Below, piece by piece: positions 689-11,100 of a DNA stretch of 64,000 nucleotides. The position numbers and the translations under genes are program-made. The stretch's first letter is position 1; the number at the start of each line of letters is the position of its first letter. The notes beneath the pieces are model-generated. The model saw only the letters and a list, made by a program, of their open reading frames with translations, was not told the DNA's origin and made no database searches. The DNA is from Basidiobolus meristosporus CBS 931.73 (Eukaryota; Fungi; Basidiobolomycota): assembly GCA_002104905.1 (NCBI GenBank), contig MCFE01000211.1, positions 1 to 64,000 of the forward strand. Direction: 5' to 3'.

Positions 689-3600
689 ATGCTACAGTAT
701 CTGGTTTCTACTAACCGCGCTTACCTACTCGGAGTATGGCTATACTTTTGGCTACTTCCTACTCGAGGCTCGGGAGCCTTTTTCTATCCAAATACCGGCG
801 GATCGCCTATTCTCACGTATCCCAATGCTGAGTTTACACCGGCGGTTTCCAATCTGACCCGGACCTACGAGCGTTCATACGCGGTAACAGCTATTGAGAT
901 GCCCATAGTGTATAATAAGTATGGGGATATCGACACCAATGGTGTAATGTTCACATTGGATCGAAATCGAAGCTATCTGCGAAGGGTTCGTAGCTCGATC
1001 CTCCGACAAATCAAAGAGTCGAAAGTCAGACCGCGTATGGAACCTTTAGTTCGGCCTTTGGTTCTCCGCTGCAATGAGGGAGAGCATATCCATGTTCGCC
1101 TGAAGAACGAAATCAGAGGTCGGCGAGTCAGCCTACATCCTCACCTTTTCGGCCAGGATATAGTGAATGATGGATCAGCAGCGGGGATGAATCCAGACAG
1201 TACAATTGCGTTCAATGAAGAGATACAATATCGCTGGCCATGTTTGAAGGAGGGAACCTACATGCTCTCCAACAATGGAGACTATGACGGAACAGACAAA
1301 GGAACTCACGTGCATGGGTTATTTGCAGCTTTGGTGGTTGAGCCGAAAGGATCTACCTGGACTGATCCGATTACAGGGCAACCTACTGATGACGGAGTTA
1401 TTGCTGATATTCACCCTGCAACGAAATATGGTGGCTGTCCTAAGCGAGGCTTTTATGAGGAAGAAGAAAAATTCACGCATCCCGATTGCTCATTTCGAGA
1501 ATTTGTGGCGATCTTCCATGACGAGACTGACATCAATCATTTCAATGCCCGCTCAATCGACCCATGCACCAACCAAACTGCTAAGCCAGAGCCAATGACC
1601 AACTCGCTCAACTACCGTTCTGAGCCTATGCGCAACCGGCAGTATGTACTCTACGACAAAATTCAACAAGGTGAAAAGCTGAATATCAATGGCGAAGAGC
1701 AGCATCACTCAAGCTGGATGTTTGGCGACCCAGCTACACCGGTATTTCGGGCATACGCTGGTGACCCAGTCAAATTTCGCGTGGTGCATGCCGGGGTTAA
1801 GGAGACTCATGTGTTTCATCTGCATGTGCACCAATGGAGTTCTTTACGTGGTGACCGTGAAAGCCTTACCATCGATTCCTTCTCTCTTTCACCACAAACA
1901 TCTTGGGATCTCGACATTCATTATGGTGCTGGCTCAAGACTGAAGTCGATTGGAGATGTTATTTGGCATTGTCATCTGTATCCGCACTTTGAGACCGGGA
2001 TGTGGGGCATATTTCGGGTGTTGGATCGATTTGAAGACGGAAAAGGAAAATATCCGGACGGAACACCAATTGAGAGATTATCCTCACTACCTACCAGGCC
2101 CCACCCGCCATTAAAGGATAAAGACCACCCAGGCTTCCCAAATTATATTGCGGGCACTGTAGGACGCAAGTCCCCACGAGTCCCATGGCCAGTTCAGCTT
2201 TTCGGTGGAATCCCAGAGGGGTCAGATTATCGGGCCGCTTCCAAGCTAGAGCTACTCAATATGAATCGAGATCCACAAGTAGGAAACCTATTCACACTGA
2301 TCCCTACTCCAAGACAGCCTAAGGTGGTAGAGGCCAATATTACTATAACCTTACGGCACTTCGAATACAACCAGCACGGCTGGCATTATCCCTACGGGCA
2401 TTTGTACATGCTAGAAGAAGAAGAAAAGGAGTCCAACCCGAGAATTCCGAGTAAATTCGAACCATTGGTATTACGAATGAGTGAAAATACTATTGGCATG
2501 AATAAGTTCACGAACAAGCTACCCAGGGTTGTTCCTGCCACTGCTTTCGACGAAGCCTTCCCTCGTTGTGAAGCGCTCAGCCACGCAGGTGAAGCCGGGA
2601 TGCATGTACACCTGGTGAAATTCGATGTGCTGGTTAGCGATGGGGCTTCAGTTGGATGGAACTACATAAGTGGCGCTAGTTTTGGGAAATACCTAATCAA
2701 TCGATGGTGGATCGATGATTCTCTTGGCCACATTTTCTTCCATGACCATCTTTTTGCCAACTATCGCCAAAAGAAAGGGCTTTATGGTCTAGCTCCTGTT
2801 GAGCCGGAGGGTTCAATCTACCTGAATCCCACTGACCTGACTCAGCAACGAAGATCCGGAGTGAGCTCCGTCATTCTAACACCCGACTCGGGGCAATCCT
2901 TCCGAGAGCAAGTTCAGTTCATTGGGGACTTTGCGCCGGCATTTGATGCACAGAACCATCCAATTAATGTTAACAGCGACCCCAACGAGGATCAGGGGAT
3001 CATGGTTTTCAACTACCGCAATGAGCCATTGGTGGAAAGAAGAGATGTGGATCCATCGCAGCAATTTAGCAGCAAAACAAAATATGGAGACCCCTCGACT
3101 ACACTTTTTGAAGCGTACCCCAAGGATAGAATAGTTGTTCGATTGGTGCAAGGCGCACACGAGGAGTCTCATAGCTTCCAGATCCACGGTATGCGGTGGT
3201 CGAGGTTTTTTTCGAATTCTGAAGTGCTGGTGTCAAACCAGCAAACTATCGGCATATCTGAAGGGTTCTCGTTGGATATTGTTCCTGACTACTCTCCAGG
3301 CGACCACCTCTACAAGCTATCTGGTATTGATGATATATGGATCGGATGTTGGGGAATAATCCGAGTTCACCAGGAACCACAAGCACATCTCCCACCCCTT
3401 CCAAATAACAACGACCCATTCGGCCATCATGGACACACCATGCAGTCATCTCCTTACCCAGAGCCTTCCAAATTGCGCGAATACCTGGTAGAGGCGCAGC
3501 AGCGGGTTCTCAACTACAATCATAAGAATTGGACCGACCCCTTCGCCATTGTATACTGCCTCAAGGTTACAAGGAGCCGATGGCAACCGATTGGGTAAAC

Positions 3601-4623
3601 GCTACAGGGAAGCATGATTGCTTCAACTATCACGATGGGCATCTAGAACCATTGATAATTCGCGGTCGTGCTGGAGAGTTTATTCAGGTCCACTTGAAAA
3701 ACAACCTGCCAAAAAAGCTCCATCCGGAGCCATTTGCGCCCCAAGTTCCTGCCGACAACCCTAGACGACAGGTCTCCAGCCATGTTTCTATCCATGCCGA
3801 TCTCCTCTTGTACGATGTTCGTGATGACGACGGAAGCAATGTCGGGCTCAACCCAGATCAAACTATACCACCTGGGCATATCAAGTCATACACCTGGTAT
3901 GCTGACCAACCGTTGGGCCCAGTTCTTCTCCAGGACTTTTCGGATGTGAGAAATCATAAGCACCATGGCTTAGTTGGTGCTCTGGTCATCCTAGGCGCGC
4001 ACGATCAGCCAGCCTCTTGGTACAAGACCGAGACAGATGTATATCACCACAGAGCAACACATTCATATACAAATGAGAAATTTGGAGCGCGCTCGCTGAT
4101 CTACCAAGATAAAGTGTTGATTATTCAAAGCGGCCTGCGTTTATTCGAGAATGGCGCGCTCGACAAACCGATACCGGATCTAGCAATCGATAGAAATGTT
4201 GAGGCTGACGCTGATGATGACTCCACTGGGTTTCCGTTTGTAGACTTCGAGGATCAAGGGCAAAAAGCCTATAATTACCGTAATCACCCAGCTGATGAAC
4301 CGGAATGGTTACGCACCGCTCATCCAGCTACCCATATTTTTGAAGCACAACCTGGTGTGTTGCAGCGCTTTCAAATCGTCGGTGGCCTGGATAAACCGAG
4401 AGCTGTCTCGTTCCATTTACACGGCCATGGTTGGCTCTCTCAGAATGCTCGACCTGGTCGTGAGTTTACCTCCGTAAACAATGCTGTTTCCCCCGGGTTC
4501 GCTCAAACCAACACCTTTTACGCAAGTCAGCATCGTGGTGATTGGGTGTATCGTGATGGCGTTCTTTTCACGAACATCCTTGATGGTTTGTGGGGCTTGT
4601 TCCGAGTCCAGGATTCTTCTTAA
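689..4623 (+). CDS. Large multicopper oxidase (six cupredoxin domains, MnxG/ceruloplasmin-like layout), split by an apparent 1-bp frameshift near 3556
   Basis: ORF 662-3598 (first ATG 689, hydrophobic N-terminus, TATAAA at 625-630) has Cu motifs SLHPH, THVHGL, HVFHLHVH, WHCHLYPHFETGM, MHVHL, FFHDH, HSFQIH. ORF 3529-4623 continues with EPLIIRG, SIHAD, NHKHHGLVGAL, FHLHGH. No intron is needed elsewhere. Confidence 0.85.
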
Positions 4624-5189: not shown

Positions 5190-6268
5190 TCAGACGATCG
5201 ATTTGAGGATAGCTTTAGCCATGTAATGATGGGCGACGGTTGTCGGATGGGCTTCGTCCCAGAAGACTTTTTTCCCTGGGTGGTTACAAATGTCGGGTAC
5301 TTCCTCTAGTGAGCTAGGAGTTTCGGTGCATGCTATATCAGGCTTGGTGTACCAGGGATTGGCAAGCTGTTTGCCAAGAAATCTGTTCATGTCAAACATC
5401 TTGACGTTTAATTGGTTGTTTTTGAGCACAAGGGATTCTAGCGCCCGATTATGAATGATGCGATTGGCTTTCATCTTGTTTTGAATCGTGTTGTTTTGGC
5501 TCGTGAAGTAAGGGTAATGGTCCATGCCCATGTTAAAGTACAGAAAGGATTTCGCAGAGAACGGAGGCTTCGACAACTTCCTGGATGTTTTGTAGATATT
5601 CGTGGCCACTGAGCTCGGGTCTATATCCGGGCCACCATAAAAGTAATCGTTTCCGGCCAGCTCGATTACGTAAAAGGTGCGCCTAGGAGAAAACTCCATG
5701 GGATTCTTCAAGAGATTTTCTCGATGGGCTTCAATTTGATCAGCAATACTAGGAACCTTTACGTCATTTTTTGAACCAGAATATCCTTGGACAACTCTAT
5801 TGTTGGCTAGAGGAAGCCTACATTAGGGCCGATTGACTACAGAGCTTCGCGAAAACAAAAATACGTACCAGTAGCACCCCCGTATGCATAGTTGAAAACC
5901 TTCCAAGAAGTTAGCTCGTGCAGGTACTCCGACCACACTGGGCCATTAGAGAAGCGGCCATGGTAAAAATAGGGCTGAGGATAGGTTTTGTTAAGCAGAG
6001 AGTAAACTTTGCCGGTATCGCTGAAAGAGTCTCCGAAGACAACAAGAGCCTTGGCACTATTTACCGAGCTCGTTCTACTCCCAGATGGCATCGCGCACAC
6101 TACGGATATGAAACAGAGTGCATAGGCACATTGGTAACTTTGCTGGCAATCGTATTCTAATTTAAATTCTTTGTCCGCGTGTGAAACGCGTAGATTGGTG
6201 GATGAGTACCCCAGCCTTGCTTGTGGCACAGAATTCCCAAGGCCTATGGTGACGGCTAATTTTGGCAT
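5190..6268 (-). CDS. GDSL/SGNH lipase-esterase, probably secreted; start codon uncertain
   Basis: Block [20 protein letters not shown], block [10 protein letters not shown], block III AGNDY, block V WDEAHPT. Intron 5807-5868 (GTACGT..CTAAT..TAG) joins GGAT to ANNRVVQ in frame. Confidence 0.9.
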
Positions 6269-6358
6269 TTATGCATGCATAATGGGGGGTTCGTTTTTAA
6301 AAATTCTGGCATATTTATTACTCAGTATCCAGAGCCAAATAGCTCATTCATCCGTTGC

Positions 6359-7422
6359 TCAGCACCCCGAGCCTAATTTGATATCCCAAAATTGAGTGTG
6401 AGCACTGAAACCAAGTGGGATTGCAACCCCGACGATACAGTTTTGGTCCTCGGCTACTTTCCCGTTAACCACATCGGTGCAAACTACGGTGTTACCGTCT
6501 TTACGGATGTATACCTCATGAGGGTGTTGGAAATAATCTAGATTTTGAGGAGGGAGCCTTGAGACTGGATCATTTTTGTTGGTGATTCTTGTCAATCTCG
6601 ATTGAGTGCTGTTCAGCCCGAATGTATCATACACCAATTGAGCGAATTCCTTGTTGCCAGTCCTGGGTTGGCCGTAGGTATGTAGGTAAATTTGTGAGCG
6701 ATCGATAATCAGAAGATCCGATTGGAAGGATCTTCCACTCATGGGATTCAAATAGAACCTCTTGATGTCCATAGCACAAAAGGCCGCCACTGCTCCTCCC
6801 TGATTGGACTGTTGAATGGATGACTCGTTGAATGTGTATTATGCTGAACTTACCAGAGAGTGGCCAGTGATTACTAATTTGTATGATTCAGTCTGATCCT
6901 TCAGAGTTGTCAGCACCTGCTTAAGCCCAGCTCTGACTGTGCTCTCGACACTTGCGTAAGTCTCATAGAATCCGCTGTGTACTTTGACTTTGTCATTTGC
7001 AGTGGGGTAAACGAACGCTGTAGGAGTAACTCCCAAATTCTTAATCCAGTTAGCCAGATTTGAGGATCTAAAGAGGGAATTCGAGTTAGATCAAATGACT
7101 ACCTCAATGGGCGGTATATTTACCCTCGGAATGAGATAACGATCTTTTTGTCTTCCTTGCTATAGCCGATGTATCCTGCAATGCCCGAAGCCCCGCTGGA
7201 GAAGTAAGTGGTAACATTCAATTTCCCAACACAGCGTTCCCCGCATGTCCAGTTGGTCAATTTTTCCTGTGGGCAGTACGCAGCAGAAGCGTATTTAGCA
7301 TGAGTTTTGAGGATGGCCAGCTCTGAGCTCTCAAGTACTGGTAGACTTTGACGCCGAGTGATTGGACTGGCTAGAGTGGTATAGCTTAGCGCCAATACAA
7401 TGAACAATCTGAGCCAATTCAT
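6359..7422 (-). CDS. Secreted class-3 (fungal) triacylglycerol lipase, 3 exons
   Basis: Signal peptide, YASAAYC, IVISFRG, nucleophile elbow GHSL|GG split by a GTAAGT intron, TYGQPRTGN, RITNKNDPVSRLP, HPHEVYI, C-terminal His. Confidence 0.93.
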
Positions 7423-8152: not shown

Positions 8153-11100
8153 TTAGATTTGACCCCATGTGAGTCGGGCCACATGGTCAGTCTTTCGGTT
8201 GGTGGACTTAATGAAGCCCATAAATTGAAGCTCGGCAATCGCCTTAATAAACCGTGCTCTACAAAGGATAGGAGTCAGACCTGGGTCGTAAAGATTACTG
8301 TGATTGCCAACTTACTGGATTTCTTGAGGCCCATGATTACGTTTCTCTTTTTCTACAACCATCTCAAATGATACAAACCAGTCATACAGATTGATCATTC
8401 GTCCGCACTCTAAATAGAGTCGATATGCAATGCTAGAATCCTCCAATTCTGAACTAAGCGCTTTACTACAGCATCGGCAGTTCAAGTAATGTTGCGGTTG
8501 ACCAAGTGCCGTTTGGATGGCAGCTCGTGGTTGTGCATTAAATGTCTAGTGTGATGAAGGTGAATCAAATTGGGCCAAAGAGAACGAACAATCTCAGAAA
8601 CCAACCTTTTCTAGCAGCTTAACATTAGAGAAATAGAAAAGCTCGTGCAGTGGCAACTCTGAGTAGCATTTGAGATTCTCTCTATATTGATAAATAGATA
8701 GAAGTTAATCTCTGCATTATCAAGGGCTCGACTAGGGGCATATACCTGAAGAAATTATTAAGGAATTCTATAACATCGTTCACCAGCAATGTGTAATATT
8801 GTACTTCCTCTGGTTCACTATCTATGGCATTCGTTCTACTAGATACTCTAGATTTACGTTTGTTTTCTGCATTGCTCGAAGCGATTAGGTTCTTTGTTTC
8901 TGATTCCGAGTCGGAGGTATCACTTCCAAAAGCCTCCTCAATAGTGTATAGCTTTTCCAGGAAATCCTGTACGTGTATCAACTCCGTGTCAAACGACACG
9001 AATTTTTCCTTCTTCTTCAAAACGTTCTCCAAGTCTTCGAGTAGCTTTTTCATTCCCTTTAGTTTCAGTTTCCTAGATGCAAGTTAGAGAAAGTTCATGC
9101 ATTACGCTGCCTACGCGAATTAATACAAACGCCCACTTACTTGGCCAGCATCAAGAGATTTTTGACATGTTGAGTATCGTATAGGTTATCGTTCAAGCCA
9201 TAGAAGTATAATATTCTCTTTGGTTTTTTCAACGCACCACCAACAAAAATATCCTGCAAAGTGCAAACGCATTCCAGTGCCTTTGCATATCTAGCATGGT
9301 ACTGTGTGAAATTTTGTAGGAATTCGGGTAGTTTTGCAACAAGGTAGTCATCATCATCCAGTAGCTTTTTGGTTTCGTCGGCATCATGCTTGACCGCCTC
9401 AACTACACTATTTAACAGGATATCAATGGATTGACATAGCAAACGGTGTACTGTTGGGCATACCTTCGAAATGATGGTTGCATCCGGATAAATTCACAAT
9501 GATCTTTGCTAAACACTGATCTAGGCGGGACTTTGAATTTTAAGGAAAGTACACTCAATGGGTTTGAGTAGAAATGCGACATGACTGCGTACTAAATCAA
9601 ACAAGGCGGGTATTCAATAAAAGAGGATTGTTGGAAGCGTTTCAGTCGGTCTACCTGTAAGCTGCACATAAAGGAATTCACCGAAAAATTGTGTTCGAAG
9701 AAATTTCCAGTTAACAGCTTATACGCGTCAACGCCTAATTTAAATCCAATATGGTCTCTAAGAAACACCTGAAGCCCAATGTCATTAGAGTAAGGAAGAG
9801 GGCACATTGCAGAGCTTTATGGATACCTCTTCGATAATAGAACCTAGAATTTCGTTTGGCCTTTGGAAATAGAATTTCTCTGCCCTTAATATCGTCAGAG
9901 TATCCTTCGATAGGGATTGGTGTAGTGCCTCAACAGATGTAGCAATACCCATGAGCAGCACAATAGGGATTCTATCACAATACTCACTGAAGTCGCAATG
10001 AGAAAAATACTCGCGGAAGAACTGTAACACTATATCATTACCTGCAAATCGTAATCAAATCGCCCAGTAATAGCGGATCAAAGCCCTCCATATCTTGAAT
10101 AACAATCACCAAGTGCTTCACTATTTGGTTCAAACACTTTGGTGTGAGCATCAAAGACCACGCTTATTCGGATGGATTATTTTCGTACCAGGCATTAGAT
10201 TGGTTTCTGGATTGGACACGGACTTGTACCATCCTTCAAGCACTTGCATATCATACGTAGAGATTTTGTAATCTACGGTCTGTCCATCTTCTTCATCAGA
10301 AATATCCACAATATCGGACACCTTAGCATCAGTGAAGGCTGTAAGCTTTTGCTGCTATTTAGCAGTAGATCAGTTTGGAATAGGTACCTTGGATCTGGAT
10401 TCAAGGAATTGAGAGATCAATAGCTTCATCGTAGTTTTTAGGTTATGGCAGTCTTTGGACTCCAGATTGGCAACGCAATGACCATCTTCATCCGAGAGTG
10501 TATCTCCAATTCTTTTGAATAGCAAGTGATTATCCGGGACATTGATACCTAAGCAATCAATGAGAGTGAGTGGCGCCCTAGCTGCTTTCTACAAAATAAT
10601 CTTCAAATACCGGCAAATATTAATCCGGTTGGAACTTCTTGGTACGGCCGGATAGAGAATCTATCAGCGAAGACGTCTTATTTTGCTGTATTTCATATCG
10701 AAGCTTTATCCATTACTAATACTAACTTGCTTTTCAGTCGCTTCTATAACAATTTCTAACAAACTCGGCAATCTCGCCAATGGCCTTGCTATTTAGACTG
10801 ACAACGAGCTCCTAAATCCAAAGCATTATCTTCAATGAGCGAAATAGACAAAATGCTCAAGGGTTGAAACTTACGTCTATCCTACTCCGGATACTGGCCC
10901 ATGTTTGTTGGTATAAATCATATCTGTATTTTACGTTGGCAAGGCCTTCTCTTCCAGAAAATAACTTTCGAAACCCGTCGAATTTTATGTGATTGATCCC
11001 GTCTACCAATTGACCTACGTTTCCCCGAAAATTATGTTAACGAAGCCATCTCATACAAATAAACGAGACGGAACAAACCTGTACTCTTCCTAGGCGGTAT

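What the first reader, a model, noticed from the sequence alone, without database searches (positions are those of the whole stretch)
689..4623. Bacterial MnxG-like six-domain multicopper oxidase in a fungal genome
Seen: ~1,310 aa with six cupredoxin-type halves, only one complete type-1 Cu site (HCHLYPHFETGM in domain 2), degenerate sites elsewhere, a hydrophobic N-terminus and no introns, while neighbouring housekeeping genes are intron-rich. Established: fungal laccases and ferroxidases are ~550-aa three-domain enzymes; the six-domain layout with these motifs is typical of Bacillus spore MnxG manganese oxidases, which work with MnxE/MnxF encoded in an operon. Inference: a horizontally acquired, eukaryotised secreted Mn/metal oxidase that lacks local MnxE/F partners.
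Basis: partly seen in the sequence, partly recalled or inferred. Interest (0 to 1): 0.75.

Follow-up and report, generated by a model that had tools for sequence, protein, structure and literature searches.

The report
Fungal MnxG-type six-domain copper oxidase
The fungus Basidiobolus meristosporus carries an intron-free gene for a very large copper enzyme of the type that Bacillus spores use to turn dissolved manganese into mineral; the gene belongs to a small, apparently undescribed fungal branch of this bacterial family, shared only with some soil chytrids, and its activity is untested.

Summary
Window 689-4623 (+) encodes a 1,311-codon homologue of Bacillus MnxG (PDB 9bxa: E 4e-191; fold TM 0.80). 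All six domains are collinear. It has one type-1 copper site and a complete trinuclear cluster between domains 2 and 3. It is gene K493DRAFT_374135 of Basidiobolus meristosporus CBS 931.73 and lies beside intron-split lipase and ORC3 genes.

1. The reading frame breaks once, with one base missing in a G run at 3566-3567. The B. ranarum orthologue reads straight through, and both sides are under purifying selection. This is probably a PacBio homopolymer error. The public 122-nt "intron" is an artefact that deletes 41 conserved residues.
2. The transfer is neither recent nor from Bacillus. All 13 fungal copies form one clade (100/100): Basidiobolus plus Spizellomycetales and Rhizophlyctidales chytrids. 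In an outgroup-rooted tree this clade is nested in bacteria, next to cyanobacterial, actinobacterial and alphaproteobacterial genes.
3. Those bacterial relatives also lack MnxE/F, so the absence of these partners is normal.

Fungal copies gained N-terminal secretion leaders. Chytrid copies carry 13-22 introns and Basidiobolus copies none. Manganese oxidation is inferred, not shown. The scan had already flagged this genome's two tandem paralogues (s1-212429).

The parts
689..3565 (+). Coding part in frame A: leader, domains 1-4 and the start of domain 5 (residues 1-959)
   Evidence: Open frame; 9bxa_A MnxG E 4e-191; AF2 model pLDDT 88.4, Foldseek 9bxa_A TM 0.80
689..775 (+). Probable signal peptide (about 29 residues, hydrophobic aromatic-rich core, then G-S-G before A). 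Bacterial homologues have no such extension
   Evidence: Bacterial proteins start directly at domain 1; all well-modelled fungal ones have a hydrophobic leader. Modelled as a low-confidence helix 2-22. No signal-peptide predictor was available
866..1423 (+). Cupredoxin domain 1 (approximate, residues 60-245)
   Evidence: Alignment to MnxG and the strands of the model
1481..2029 (+). Cupredoxin domain 2 (approximate, residues 265-447). Carries the only type-1 copper site and half of the trinuclear cluster
   Evidence: Pfam Cu-oxidase_2; two-domain laccase matches at 348-447
1808..1825 (+). HxxHxH motif: H374 (type 1), H377 and H379 (trinuclear)
   Evidence: Invariant in 187 bacterial and 12 fungal rows
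1967..2002 (+). HCHxxxHxxxxM motif: H427, C428, H429, H433, M438. H433 corresponds to MnxG H340, the residue mutated in 9bxa
2321..2803 (+). Cupredoxin domain 3 (approximate, residues 545-705). Carries the other four trinuclear His: H639, H641 (2603-2611) and H685, H687 (2741-2749)
   Evidence: Invariant columns
2816..3373 (+). Cupredoxin domain 4 (approximate, residues 710-895). Remnant His motif, no Cys
3566..3567 (+). Frame break: two bases (GT) where the B. ranarum orthologue has a Gly codon (GGG). One base is missing in a G run
3566..3687 (+). The public gene model's 122-nt 'intron'. An artefact: it removes 41 residues that are conserved in fungal and nearest bacterial homologues
3568..4623 (+). 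Coding part in frame B: rest of domain 5 (to about 4017), domain 6 (about 4075-4611) and the stop codon
   Evidence: 9bxa_A E 4.6e-45, residues 878-1205; pN 0.14 against pS 0.79 versus B. ranarum
5190..6268 (-). Neighbour: GDSL lipase gene split over two ORFs
6359..7422 (-). Neighbour: class-3 lipase gene split over several ORFs
8682..10030 (-). Neighbour: ORC3, a eukaryote-specific gene, split over several ORFs. No N between it and the oxidase gene

Best explanation
This is a nuclear gene of Basidiobolus meristosporus for a secreted, stand-alone, six-domain multicopper oxidase of the MnxG family. It is one of three paralogues in this genome.

Origin. The family entered fungi from bacteria once, long ago. 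The donor was related to the stand-alone enzymes of cyanobacteria, actinobacteria and alphaproteobacteria. The family now survives only in Basidiobolus and in two orders of soil chytrids.

Changes in the fungus. The protein acquired an N-terminal secretory leader, and the gene acquired host-like base composition.

Proposed mechanism (inferred). The substrate gives up electrons one at a time at the single type-1 copper in domain 2 (H374, C428, H433, M438). The electrons pass through the H-C-H bridge to the trinuclear copper cluster between domains 2 and 3 (H377, H379, H427, H429, H639, H641, H685, H687). There O2 is reduced to water. The most likely substrate is Mn(II), or another metal ion, oxidised outside the cell or in the wall. 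No MnxE/F cap is involved.

The frame break. The single break at 3566-3567 is most likely a homopolymer error of the PacBio assembly, and the gene is probably intact.

What is shown and what is inferred. Shown: homology, fold, ligand set, genomic integration, phylogeny, leader, lack of introns. Inferred: secretion, substrate, intactness.
For: Homology and fold: E 4e-191 and 4.6e-45 to 9bxa_A; pLDDT 88.4; TM 0.80 to Mnx against 0.48 or less for ceruloplasmin and 0.22 for laccases.

Copper sites: all 12 ligands are kept, as are 78 of 83 family-invariant charged or aromatic columns.

Identity and integration: 100% match to K493DRAFT_374135 on a 127.7-kb contig. The neighbours are intron-split lipases and ORC3, with no N in between. 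GC3 is 0.48, within the neighbours' 0.45-0.55.

Phylogeny: the fungi form one clade at 100/100 in three careful trees. With haloarchaeal, Rubrobacter and Nonomuraea outgroups this clade sits inside bacteria beneath three nodes with 97/95 to 100/100 support. A profile search found no other eukaryote carrying the family. At least 581 bacterial species genomes carry it.

Frame break: the orthologue reads through the break. The segment after the break is conserved in chytrids and in the sister bacteria. pN/pS is about 0.13 before the break and 0.17 after it. The assembly is PacBio (PMC7466969). The paralogue P0006 shows a similar single break.

Secretion: leaders are present in fungal proteins only.

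Accessory proteins: MnxE/F-like ORFs are absent from the window, from the paralogue locus and from the Geodermatophilus and Oculatella loci. They are present next to the B. albus gene.
Against: No expression data: no RNA run could be listed.

The frame break could be real, which would make this copy a young pseudogene.

In Bacillus sp. PL-12, mnxE, mnxF and mnxG are all required for activity (PMC5622069). Activity of a lone MnxG-type protein has therefore never been shown.

Identity to the only characterised enzyme is about 45% over domains 1-4 and lower over domains 5-6.

Many bacterial homologues sit in anaerobic gut Clostridia, so Mn oxidation cannot be assumed for the whole family.

The window protein's leader is less hydrophobic than those of its paralogues, and no signal-peptide predictor was run.

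The NCBIfam MnxG equivalog model is matched far below its cut-off: 211 against 3100 bits.
Confidence: 0.8

Rival explanations
1. The frame break is real. The window copy is then a recently inactivated paralogue (a young pseudogene), and its two tandem relatives carry the function.
For: The assembled sequence has the break. The family is multi-copy in this genome, so loss of one copy would be tolerated. No reads could be laid to check the base.
Against: It is the only defect in 1,311 codons. Downstream codons show pN 0.14 against pS 0.79 versus B. ranarum. The missing base lies in a G run of a PacBio assembly. A second paralogue shows the same kind of single break, which fits an error-prone assembly better than two independent young pseudogenes.
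Confidence: 0.27
2. The enzyme is active but is not a manganese oxidase. It might be a laccase-like phenol oxidase that cross-links or pigments spore or zygospore walls, as CotA does. It might instead be a cuprous or ferrous oxidase for metal handling.
For: Only one member of this large family has been assayed. Homologues abound in anaerobic spore-forming Clostridia, where a spore-coat role is more plausible than Mn mineralisation. The fungal proteins lack the MnxE3F3 ring through which Mn(IV) leaves the Bacillus complex (PMC13689576).
Against: 78 of 83 family-invariant polar or aromatic positions, shared with the Bacillus enzyme, are kept. The fold match to Mnx is far better than to any laccase or ferroxidase.
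Confidence: 0.4
3. Basidiobolus and the chytrids acquired the gene separately, or one fungus passed it to the other. This would replace a single ancient acquisition followed by vertical descent and many losses.
For: The distribution is extremely patchy: three lineages among all fungi sampled. The divergent Fimicolochytrium paralogue P0017 branches outside Basidiobolus plus the other chytrids, and the AU test rejects chytrid monophyly (p 0.006). P0017 nevertheless shares three intron positions and phases with the other chytrid genes, while all Basidiobolus copies are intron-free. That combination would fit an intron-less copy derived from a chytrid-like gene.
Against: Within the core chytrids the gene tree follows the species tree. 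Basidiobolus and the core chytrids are reciprocally monophyletic, with long stems. P0017 is a long branch (1.1 changes per column), so its position may be an artefact. No bacterial sequence among 5.8 billion proteins breaks up the fungal clade.
Confidence: 0.45
4. Bacterial contamination, or a chimeric join of bacterial DNA to a fungal contig.
For: The gene is intron-free and its closest characterised relative is bacterial.
Against: It lies on one gap-free stretch with intron-split eukaryotic genes, including ORC3. An orthologue with 80% protein identity exists in an independent B. ranarum assembly. Two paralogues sit among DEAD helicase, RabGAP, Arf and FancD2 genes. GC3 is host-like. The eukaryote-type leader is absent from bacteria. 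The best bacterial identity is only 44%.
Confidence: 0.01

Closest known systems
MnxG of Bacillus sp. PL-12, the catalytic subunit of the Mnx manganese-oxidase complex (PDB 9bxa)
   Same: Six collinear cupredoxin domains. A single type-1 copper in domain 2. A trinuclear cluster between domains 2 and 3. About 45% identity over domains 1-4. Fold TM 0.80.
   Different: The fungal protein has a roughly 60-residue N-terminal extension with a secretory leader. It has an insertion of about 16 residues at the start of domain 5, shared with fungal and cyanobacterial or actinobacterial relatives. There are no MnxE/MnxF genes, whereas the Bacillus enzyme needs them. It is eukaryotic and nuclear, not part of an operon and not a spore exosporium protein.
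Uncharacterised stand-alone MnxG-like oxidases of cyanobacteria (Oculatella, Leptolyngbya), Actinomycetota (Geodermatophilus, MAGs) and Alphaproteobacteria (Belnapia, Roseomonas)
   Same: Sister group in every tree (100/99). They share the domain-5 insertion and have no adjacent MnxE/F.
   Different: 37-44% identity. The bacterial proteins start directly at domain 1, without a leader. None has been characterised.
Ceruloplasmin, hephaestin and coagulation factors V and VIII (eukaryotic six-domain cupredoxin proteins)
   Same: Six cupredoxin domains in one chain.
   Different: Fold TM is only 0.44-0.48 and identity about 10%. From general knowledge, ceruloplasmin places its trinuclear cluster between domains 1 and 6 and has type-1 sites in domains 2, 4 and 6. 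Here the cluster ligands lie in domains 2 and 3 and there is one type-1 site.
Fungal three-domain laccases and Fet3-type ferroxidases
   Same: The same copper-ligand motifs and the same chemistry of O2 reduction.
   Different: They are about 500-560 residues with three domains. Fold TM is 0.22. They are not the nearest relatives in any search.
Bacterial-origin genes of Basidiobolus described by Tabima et al. 2020 (PMC7466969)
   Same: Intron-free, with host-like composition, on scaffolds with fungal genes. This matches the general signature reported for about 5% of B. meristosporus genes.
   Different: That study concerns secondary-metabolite genes and attributes the transfers to gut bacteria. 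This family is shared with soil chytrids and is therefore older. It is not mentioned in the text of that paper or in the Ciach et al. survey, including the supplements held for the latter.

Membership tests
MnxG-type six-domain multicopper oxidase | Six cupredoxin domains collinear with MnxG | tested here: met
   phmmer to 9bxa_A covers MnxG 3-786 and 878-1205. The AF2 model of residues 1-959 gives Foldseek 9bxa_A E 1.4e-90 and TM 0.80.
MnxG-type six-domain multicopper oxidase | A single type-1 copper site (His, Cys, His, Met) in domain 2 | tested here: met
   H374, C428, H433 and M438. This is the only HCH in the protein, and the columns are invariant in 199 homologues.
MnxG-type six-domain multicopper oxidase | Eight-His trinuclear cluster contributed by domains 2 and 3 | tested here: met
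   H377, H379, H427, H429, H639, H641, H685 and H687 are all present.
MnxG-type six-domain multicopper oxidase | Placement inside the family in a rooted tree | tested here: met
   Careful IQ-TREE (LG+C20) with distant outgroups nests the fungal clade three supported nodes deep.
MnxG-type six-domain multicopper oxidase | Score above the NCBIfam equivalog cut-off (NF041487, 3100 bits) | tested here: not met
   210.7 and 49 bits. The model has 1,894 positions, much longer than the 1,227-residue Bacillus protein, so it appears to describe a longer MnxG type. The window protein is a family member, not an equivalog of that model.
Mnx complex (MnxE3F3-MnxG) of Bacillus | mnxE and mnxF accessory genes next to mnxG | tested here: not met
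   MnxE/F homologues were identified beside B. albus mnxG and used as queries. tblastn, phmmer and iterated profiles gave no hit in the window, in L001, in L002 or in the sister-group loci. Hits appeared in only 2 of 80 bacterial species loci. The rest of the Basidiobolus genome was not searched.
Mnx complex (MnxE3F3-MnxG) of Bacillus | Oxidation of Mn(II) to Mn(IV) oxide | not testable with these tools
   Needs an enzyme assay.
Ceruloplasmin-type six-domain oxidase | Type-1 sites in domains 2, 4 and 6, and a trinuclear cluster between domains 1 and 6 | tested here: not met
   One HCH only, and the cluster ligands lie in domains 2 and 3. Fold TM is 0.48 or less.
Fungal laccase / Fet3 three-domain oxidase | About 550 residues and three domains | tested here: not met
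   1,311 residues. Fold TM is 0.22 to laccases.

The most novel reading that the evidence does not exclude
Early-diverging soil fungi (Basidiobolus, Spizellomycetales, Rhizophlyctidales) secrete an accessory-protein-independent MnxG-type enzyme that mineralises Mn(II) to Mn(IV) oxide. This would be a second, bacterial-derived route of fungal manganese oxidation, unrelated to laccases and Mn peroxidases. In addition, the intron-free Basidiobolus copies may descend from an intron-bearing chytrid-like gene through an RNA intermediate.
Probability: 0.25. Interest if true: 0.75.

Novelty: new member of a known kind. Interest (0 to 1): 0.5.

Why it matters
Enzymatic manganese oxidation by fungi is currently attributed to laccase-like three-domain oxidases and peroxidases of Dikarya. 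A MnxG-type enzyme in chytrids and Basidiobolus would add a new enzyme class and new organisms to soil manganese cycling. It would also offer a naturally stand-alone, secreted, eukaryote-expressed relative of an enzyme that is hard to produce without its MnxE/F partners. For evolution, it is a clean case of an old bacterial gene fully domesticated in fungi, with a leader peptide and up to 22 introns in chytrids. Its odd distribution and intron pattern can test vertical loss against fungus-to-fungus transfer. On the practical side, the public gene models of at least three Basidiobolus copies are wrong: false introns bridge frame breaks or trim the reading frame.

Tried and rejected
1. A 47-nt intron (3566-3612) that I proposed because it restores Bacillus-like spacing, and the public 122-nt intron (3566-3687). 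Both are rejected. The B. ranarum orthologue is one uninterrupted ORF across the site, and the 'intron' encodes a segment conserved in chytrids and sister bacteria.

2. RNA evidence. No RNA run could be listed.

3. The cryo-EM paper (JACS 2024) and the PNAS 2013 paper are not held. The Mn-binding and MnxE/F-contact residues of MnxG therefore could not be compared.

4. Literature searches linking MnxG or manganese oxidation with Basidiobolus or the chytrid genera found nothing. Two HGT surveys do not mention the genes. The supplements of Tabima et al. are not held.

5. The unrooted trees alone could not give the direction of transfer, because the fungi, the sister group and the rest meet at one node. 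This was solved with distant plasmid-borne homologues used as an outgroup.

6. Protein Atlas look-alikes were all bacterial clusters and added nothing.

7. The third word-index search and the large representative search were left unused because they were not needed.

8. The two frame pieces were handed to search and fold tools separately, by reference. The joined read-through, with X at the break, was used only inside scripts for alignment and numbering. The trees used the stored public model P0001.

Full report
WHAT IS THERE

On the + strand, window 689-4623 holds two overlapping open frames: 662/689-3598 and 3529-4623. The first piece matches the catalytic subunit MnxG of the Bacillus sp. 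PL-12 manganese oxidase (PDB 9bxa_A) at E 4e-191, with residues 62-896 aligned to MnxG 3-786. The second piece matches at E 4.6e-45, with residues 40-362 aligned to MnxG 878-1205. It also matches, more weakly, the two earlier domain pairs, which shows the three-fold repeat of a two-domain unit. Pfam sees only weak Cu-oxidase domains. The NCBIfam MnxG equivalog model is hit at 211 bits against a 3,100-bit cut-off. An AlphaFold model of residues 1-959, built with a 60-row alignment, has pLDDT 88.4 and pTM 0.87. Its best structural match is 9bxa_A (E 1.4e-90, TM 0.80). Ceruloplasmin and factors V/VIII follow at TM 0.44-0.48, and three-domain laccases at 0.22.

COPPER SITES

I aligned the protein with 187 bacterial and 12 fungal homologues. 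It keeps all twelve canonical ligands:
- Type-1 copper: H374, C428, H433, M438.
- Trinuclear cluster: H377, H379, H427, H429 from domain 2, and H639, H641, H685, H687 from domain 3.

There is only one HCH motif. Of 83 family-invariant charged or aromatic columns, 78 are kept. H433 corresponds to H340 of MnxG, the residue mutated to Ala in the deposited 9bxa structure. The protein looks catalytically competent.

THE FRAME BREAK IS NOT AN INTRON

The window is 100% identical to K493DRAFT_374135 of Basidiobolus meristosporus CBS 931.73, a 1,270-residue protein annotated 'hypothetical protein / Cupredoxin' on a 127.7-kb contig. That public model joins 3565 to 3688 through a 122-nt intron. I first favoured a 47-nt intron with the same donor. 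Both are wrong, for these reasons:
- In B. ranarum the orthologue is one uninterrupted ORF of at least 1,169 codons that runs off its contig (L001 2767-6273).
- The orthologue reads AAG GGG TAT where the window reads AAG GT TAC.
- In the second frame, the residues that follow (YKEPMATDWVNAT...) are conserved in chytrids (AYKEPGTTKWIEV) and in the nearest bacterial relatives. They are an insertion relative to Bacillota MnxG.
- Against B. ranarum, non-synonymous differences are few on both sides of the break (pN 0.11 and 0.14), while synonymous sites are saturated (pS 0.86 and 0.79).

One base is therefore missing from a G run. The assembly is PacBio (PMC7466969). The tandem paralogue K493DRAFT_409940 shows the same kind of single break, again bridged by dubious introns in the public model. 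I put about 65-70% on an assembly error and 25-30% on a very young pseudogene. Read through, the protein has 1,311 residues. The public model omits 41 of them.

GENOMIC SETTING

Downstream on the opposite strand lie a GDSL lipase, a class-3 lipase and ORC3. Each is split over several ORFs, as intron-bearing genes are, and there is no N in the window. GC3 of the oxidase gene (0.48) lies within the neighbours' range (0.45-0.55). It is far from Geodermatophilus (0.91) and B. albus (0.23). Two paralogues lie head to tail on another contig among DEAD helicase, RabGAP, Arf and FancD2 genes, and one of them is an intact intron-free ORF of 1,342 codons. Contamination or misjoining is excluded.

RELATIVES AND PHYLOGENY

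The word-index search returned the following, in order:
- Basidiobolus copies: the B. ranarum orthologue at 83% identity and paralogues at 54-58%.
- Chytrid proteins at 45-49%: Rhizophlyctis rosea, Borealophlyctis, Spizellomyces punctatus, Powellomyces hirtus, Fimicolochytrium jonesii.
- Bacteria at 44% or less.

A search with a profile of the fungal proteins added only a second Fimicolochytrium copy. It showed a score gap between the fungi (1,723 bits or more) and the best bacterium (1,466 bits). No other eukaryote appeared. In bacteria the family is very broad: two peptide patterns alone found relatives in at least 581 species-level genomes of cyanobacteria, Actinomycetota, Alphaproteobacteria, Myxococcota, Bacteroidota and, above all, Clostridia.

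The trees gave these results:
- FastTree on 120 rows, and careful IQ-TREE (LG+C20) on 46 and 41 rows, give one fungal clade at 100/100.
- Basidiobolus (100/100) and six core chytrid genes (100/100) are reciprocally monophyletic.
- The core chytrids follow the species tree: Spizellomycetales against Rhizophlyctidales.
- The whole fungal clade is sister to a cyanobacterial, actinobacterial, alphaproteobacterial and Bacteroidota group at 100/99.

These trees are unrooted, so I added distant full-length homologues found on plasmids and megaplasmids as an outgroup: two haloarchaea, Rubrobacter and Nonomuraea, at 26-28% identity. The fungal clade then sits inside bacteria beneath three nodes with 100/100, 97/95 and 100/99 support, far from the Bacillota that include Bacillus. 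The gene is thus of bacterial origin. The transfer is old and shared among fungi, and the donor was not Bacillus-like.

HOW THE FUNGI GOT IT REMAINS OPEN

Chytrid copies are thoroughly eukaryotic. I resolved 19-22 GT-AG introns in Spizellomyces, Powellomyces and Borealophlyctis, and 15 and 13 in the two Fimicolochytrium genes. At least eight positions are shared between the two chytrid orders. The reliably modelled Basidiobolus reading frames have none: the window gene, K493DRAFT_380874 and the B. ranarum orthologue. The introns in the public models of two further copies look like artefacts.

The divergent Fimicolochytrium paralogue P0017 branches outside Basidiobolus plus the core chytrids, and the AU test rejects chytrid monophyly (p 0.006). 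P0017 nevertheless shares three intron positions, with identical phase, with the core chytrid genes. By my own rough estimate, not a tool result, chance would give about 0.15 such matches. Two readings fit:
- P0017 is misplaced by long-branch attraction, and the introns arose on the chytrid stem.
- The Basidiobolus genes descend from an intron-bearing ancestor and lost every intron.

I cannot decide between an ancient acquisition with many losses, fungus-to-fungus transfer, and parallel acquisition from unsampled sister donors.

DOMESTICATION

Bacterial homologues start directly at the first cupredoxin strand. Every well-modelled fungal protein carries an N-terminal extension with a hydrophobic segment. 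In the window protein, its paralogues, Spizellomyces and Powellomyces it looks like a cleavable signal peptide. In Rhizophlyctis and Borealophlyctis it looks like a signal anchor. One Fimicolochytrium copy adds a Ser/Thr-rich tail and a C-terminal hydrophobic anchor. An extracellular or wall location is therefore likely. This is inferred, because no predictor was available.

MnxE/F

In Bacillus sp. PL-12, mnxE, mnxF and mnxG are all needed for activity, and an E3F3 ring caps MnxG (PMC5622069; PMC13689576, which cites the 2024 cryo-EM work). I identified MnxE and MnxF homologues beside the B. albus gene (9bxa_B E 3e-22; 9bxa_E E 4e-15) and used them as queries, with iterated profiles. There is no hit in the window, in the paralogue locus, in the B. 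ranarum locus or in the Geodermatophilus and Oculatella loci. Among 80 bacterial species loci with 3-kb flanks, only an Ammonifex and a Eubacteriales MAG have them. Lack of MnxE/F is the normal state of the family and not a peculiarity of the fungal gene.

FUNCTION

Shown: a complete multicopper oxidase electron path and strong purifying selection.

Inferred: the substrate. Mn(II) is the only substrate demonstrated for any member of the family, so it is the best single guess (about 40%). A wall or spore phenol-oxidase role, or a metal-homeostasis role, is about equally likely. Homologues are plentiful in anaerobic gut Clostridia, which cautions against extending the Bacillus function to the whole family.

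NOVELTY

No paper in the held library links MnxG with these fungi. A 2013 survey of six-domain copper proteins found MnxG relatives only in bacteria and two haloarchaea (PMC3600357). The two surveys of bacterial genes in early-diverging fungi do not mention the family. The public records call the proteins hypothetical. Within this scan, the two tandem paralogues were already flagged, and a follow-up reached the same general reading (s1-212429, s1-209627). The present gene is the third copy in the genome.

I class the finding as a new member of a known kind. It has moderate interest as a testable lead for fungal manganese oxidation and as a well-resolved old bacterial-to-fungal transfer.

Noticed in passing
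L002 4823-9408 (B. meristosporus MCFE01000386, paralogue K493DRAFT_409940): The public model has four 5' introns and no leader. In tblastn with the neighbouring paralogue the gene is collinear and intron-free, with one frame change near 6313-6319 and a normal leader-bearing start near 5342. The model probably bridges an assembly indel.
   Followed up: partly
L001 2767-6273 (B. ranarum JASJQH010008115): The public model K7432_013123 (1,042 aa) starts at 3001 and contains an 82-nt intron. The DNA holds one uninterrupted ORF of 1,169 codons, starting with a leader similar to the window's and running off the contig end.
   Followed up: partly
L008 10001-15182 (+) and 16568-22313 (-) (Fimicolochytrium jonesii): Two convergently oriented family members lie on one contig. 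The divergent one (1,608 aa) has a Ser/Thr-rich C-terminal tail ending in a hydrophobic anchor, which suggests a membrane- or wall-tethered form.
   Followed up: partly
L020-L087 (GTDB species loci): MnxG-like six-domain oxidases are very common in gut Lachnospiraceae, Oscillospiraceae and Ruminococcus MAGs, which are strict anaerobes. The role of an O2-reducing copper oxidase there is unexplained; a spore-coat role is one possibility.
   Followed up: no
L091, L092 (Halalkalicoccus jeotgali and Haladaptatus pallidirubidus plasmids): Full-length distant homologues (26-28% identity) are carried on haloarchaeal megaplasmids. Bacillus cereus-group, Priestia and Microvirga plasmids carry closer ones, so the family is plasmid-mobile in prokaryotes.
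   Followed up: partly
L004 8540-12195 (Geodermatophilus sp.): The actinobacterial homologue is followed by three transposase or integrase genes (DDE_3, rve, DDE_Tnp_1), which hints at a mobile context.
   Followed up: no
window 5190-7422 (-): Two different lipase genes (GDSL type and class 3) lie back to back immediately downstream of the oxidase gene. Both are intron-split.
   Followed up: no
L006 6001-10865 (Spizellomyces punctatus SPPG_09220): The public 1,180-aa model is shorter than its relatives, and my exon mapping left a few residues unplaced around 372-376. The model may miss or mis-splice a short exon.
   Followed up: no
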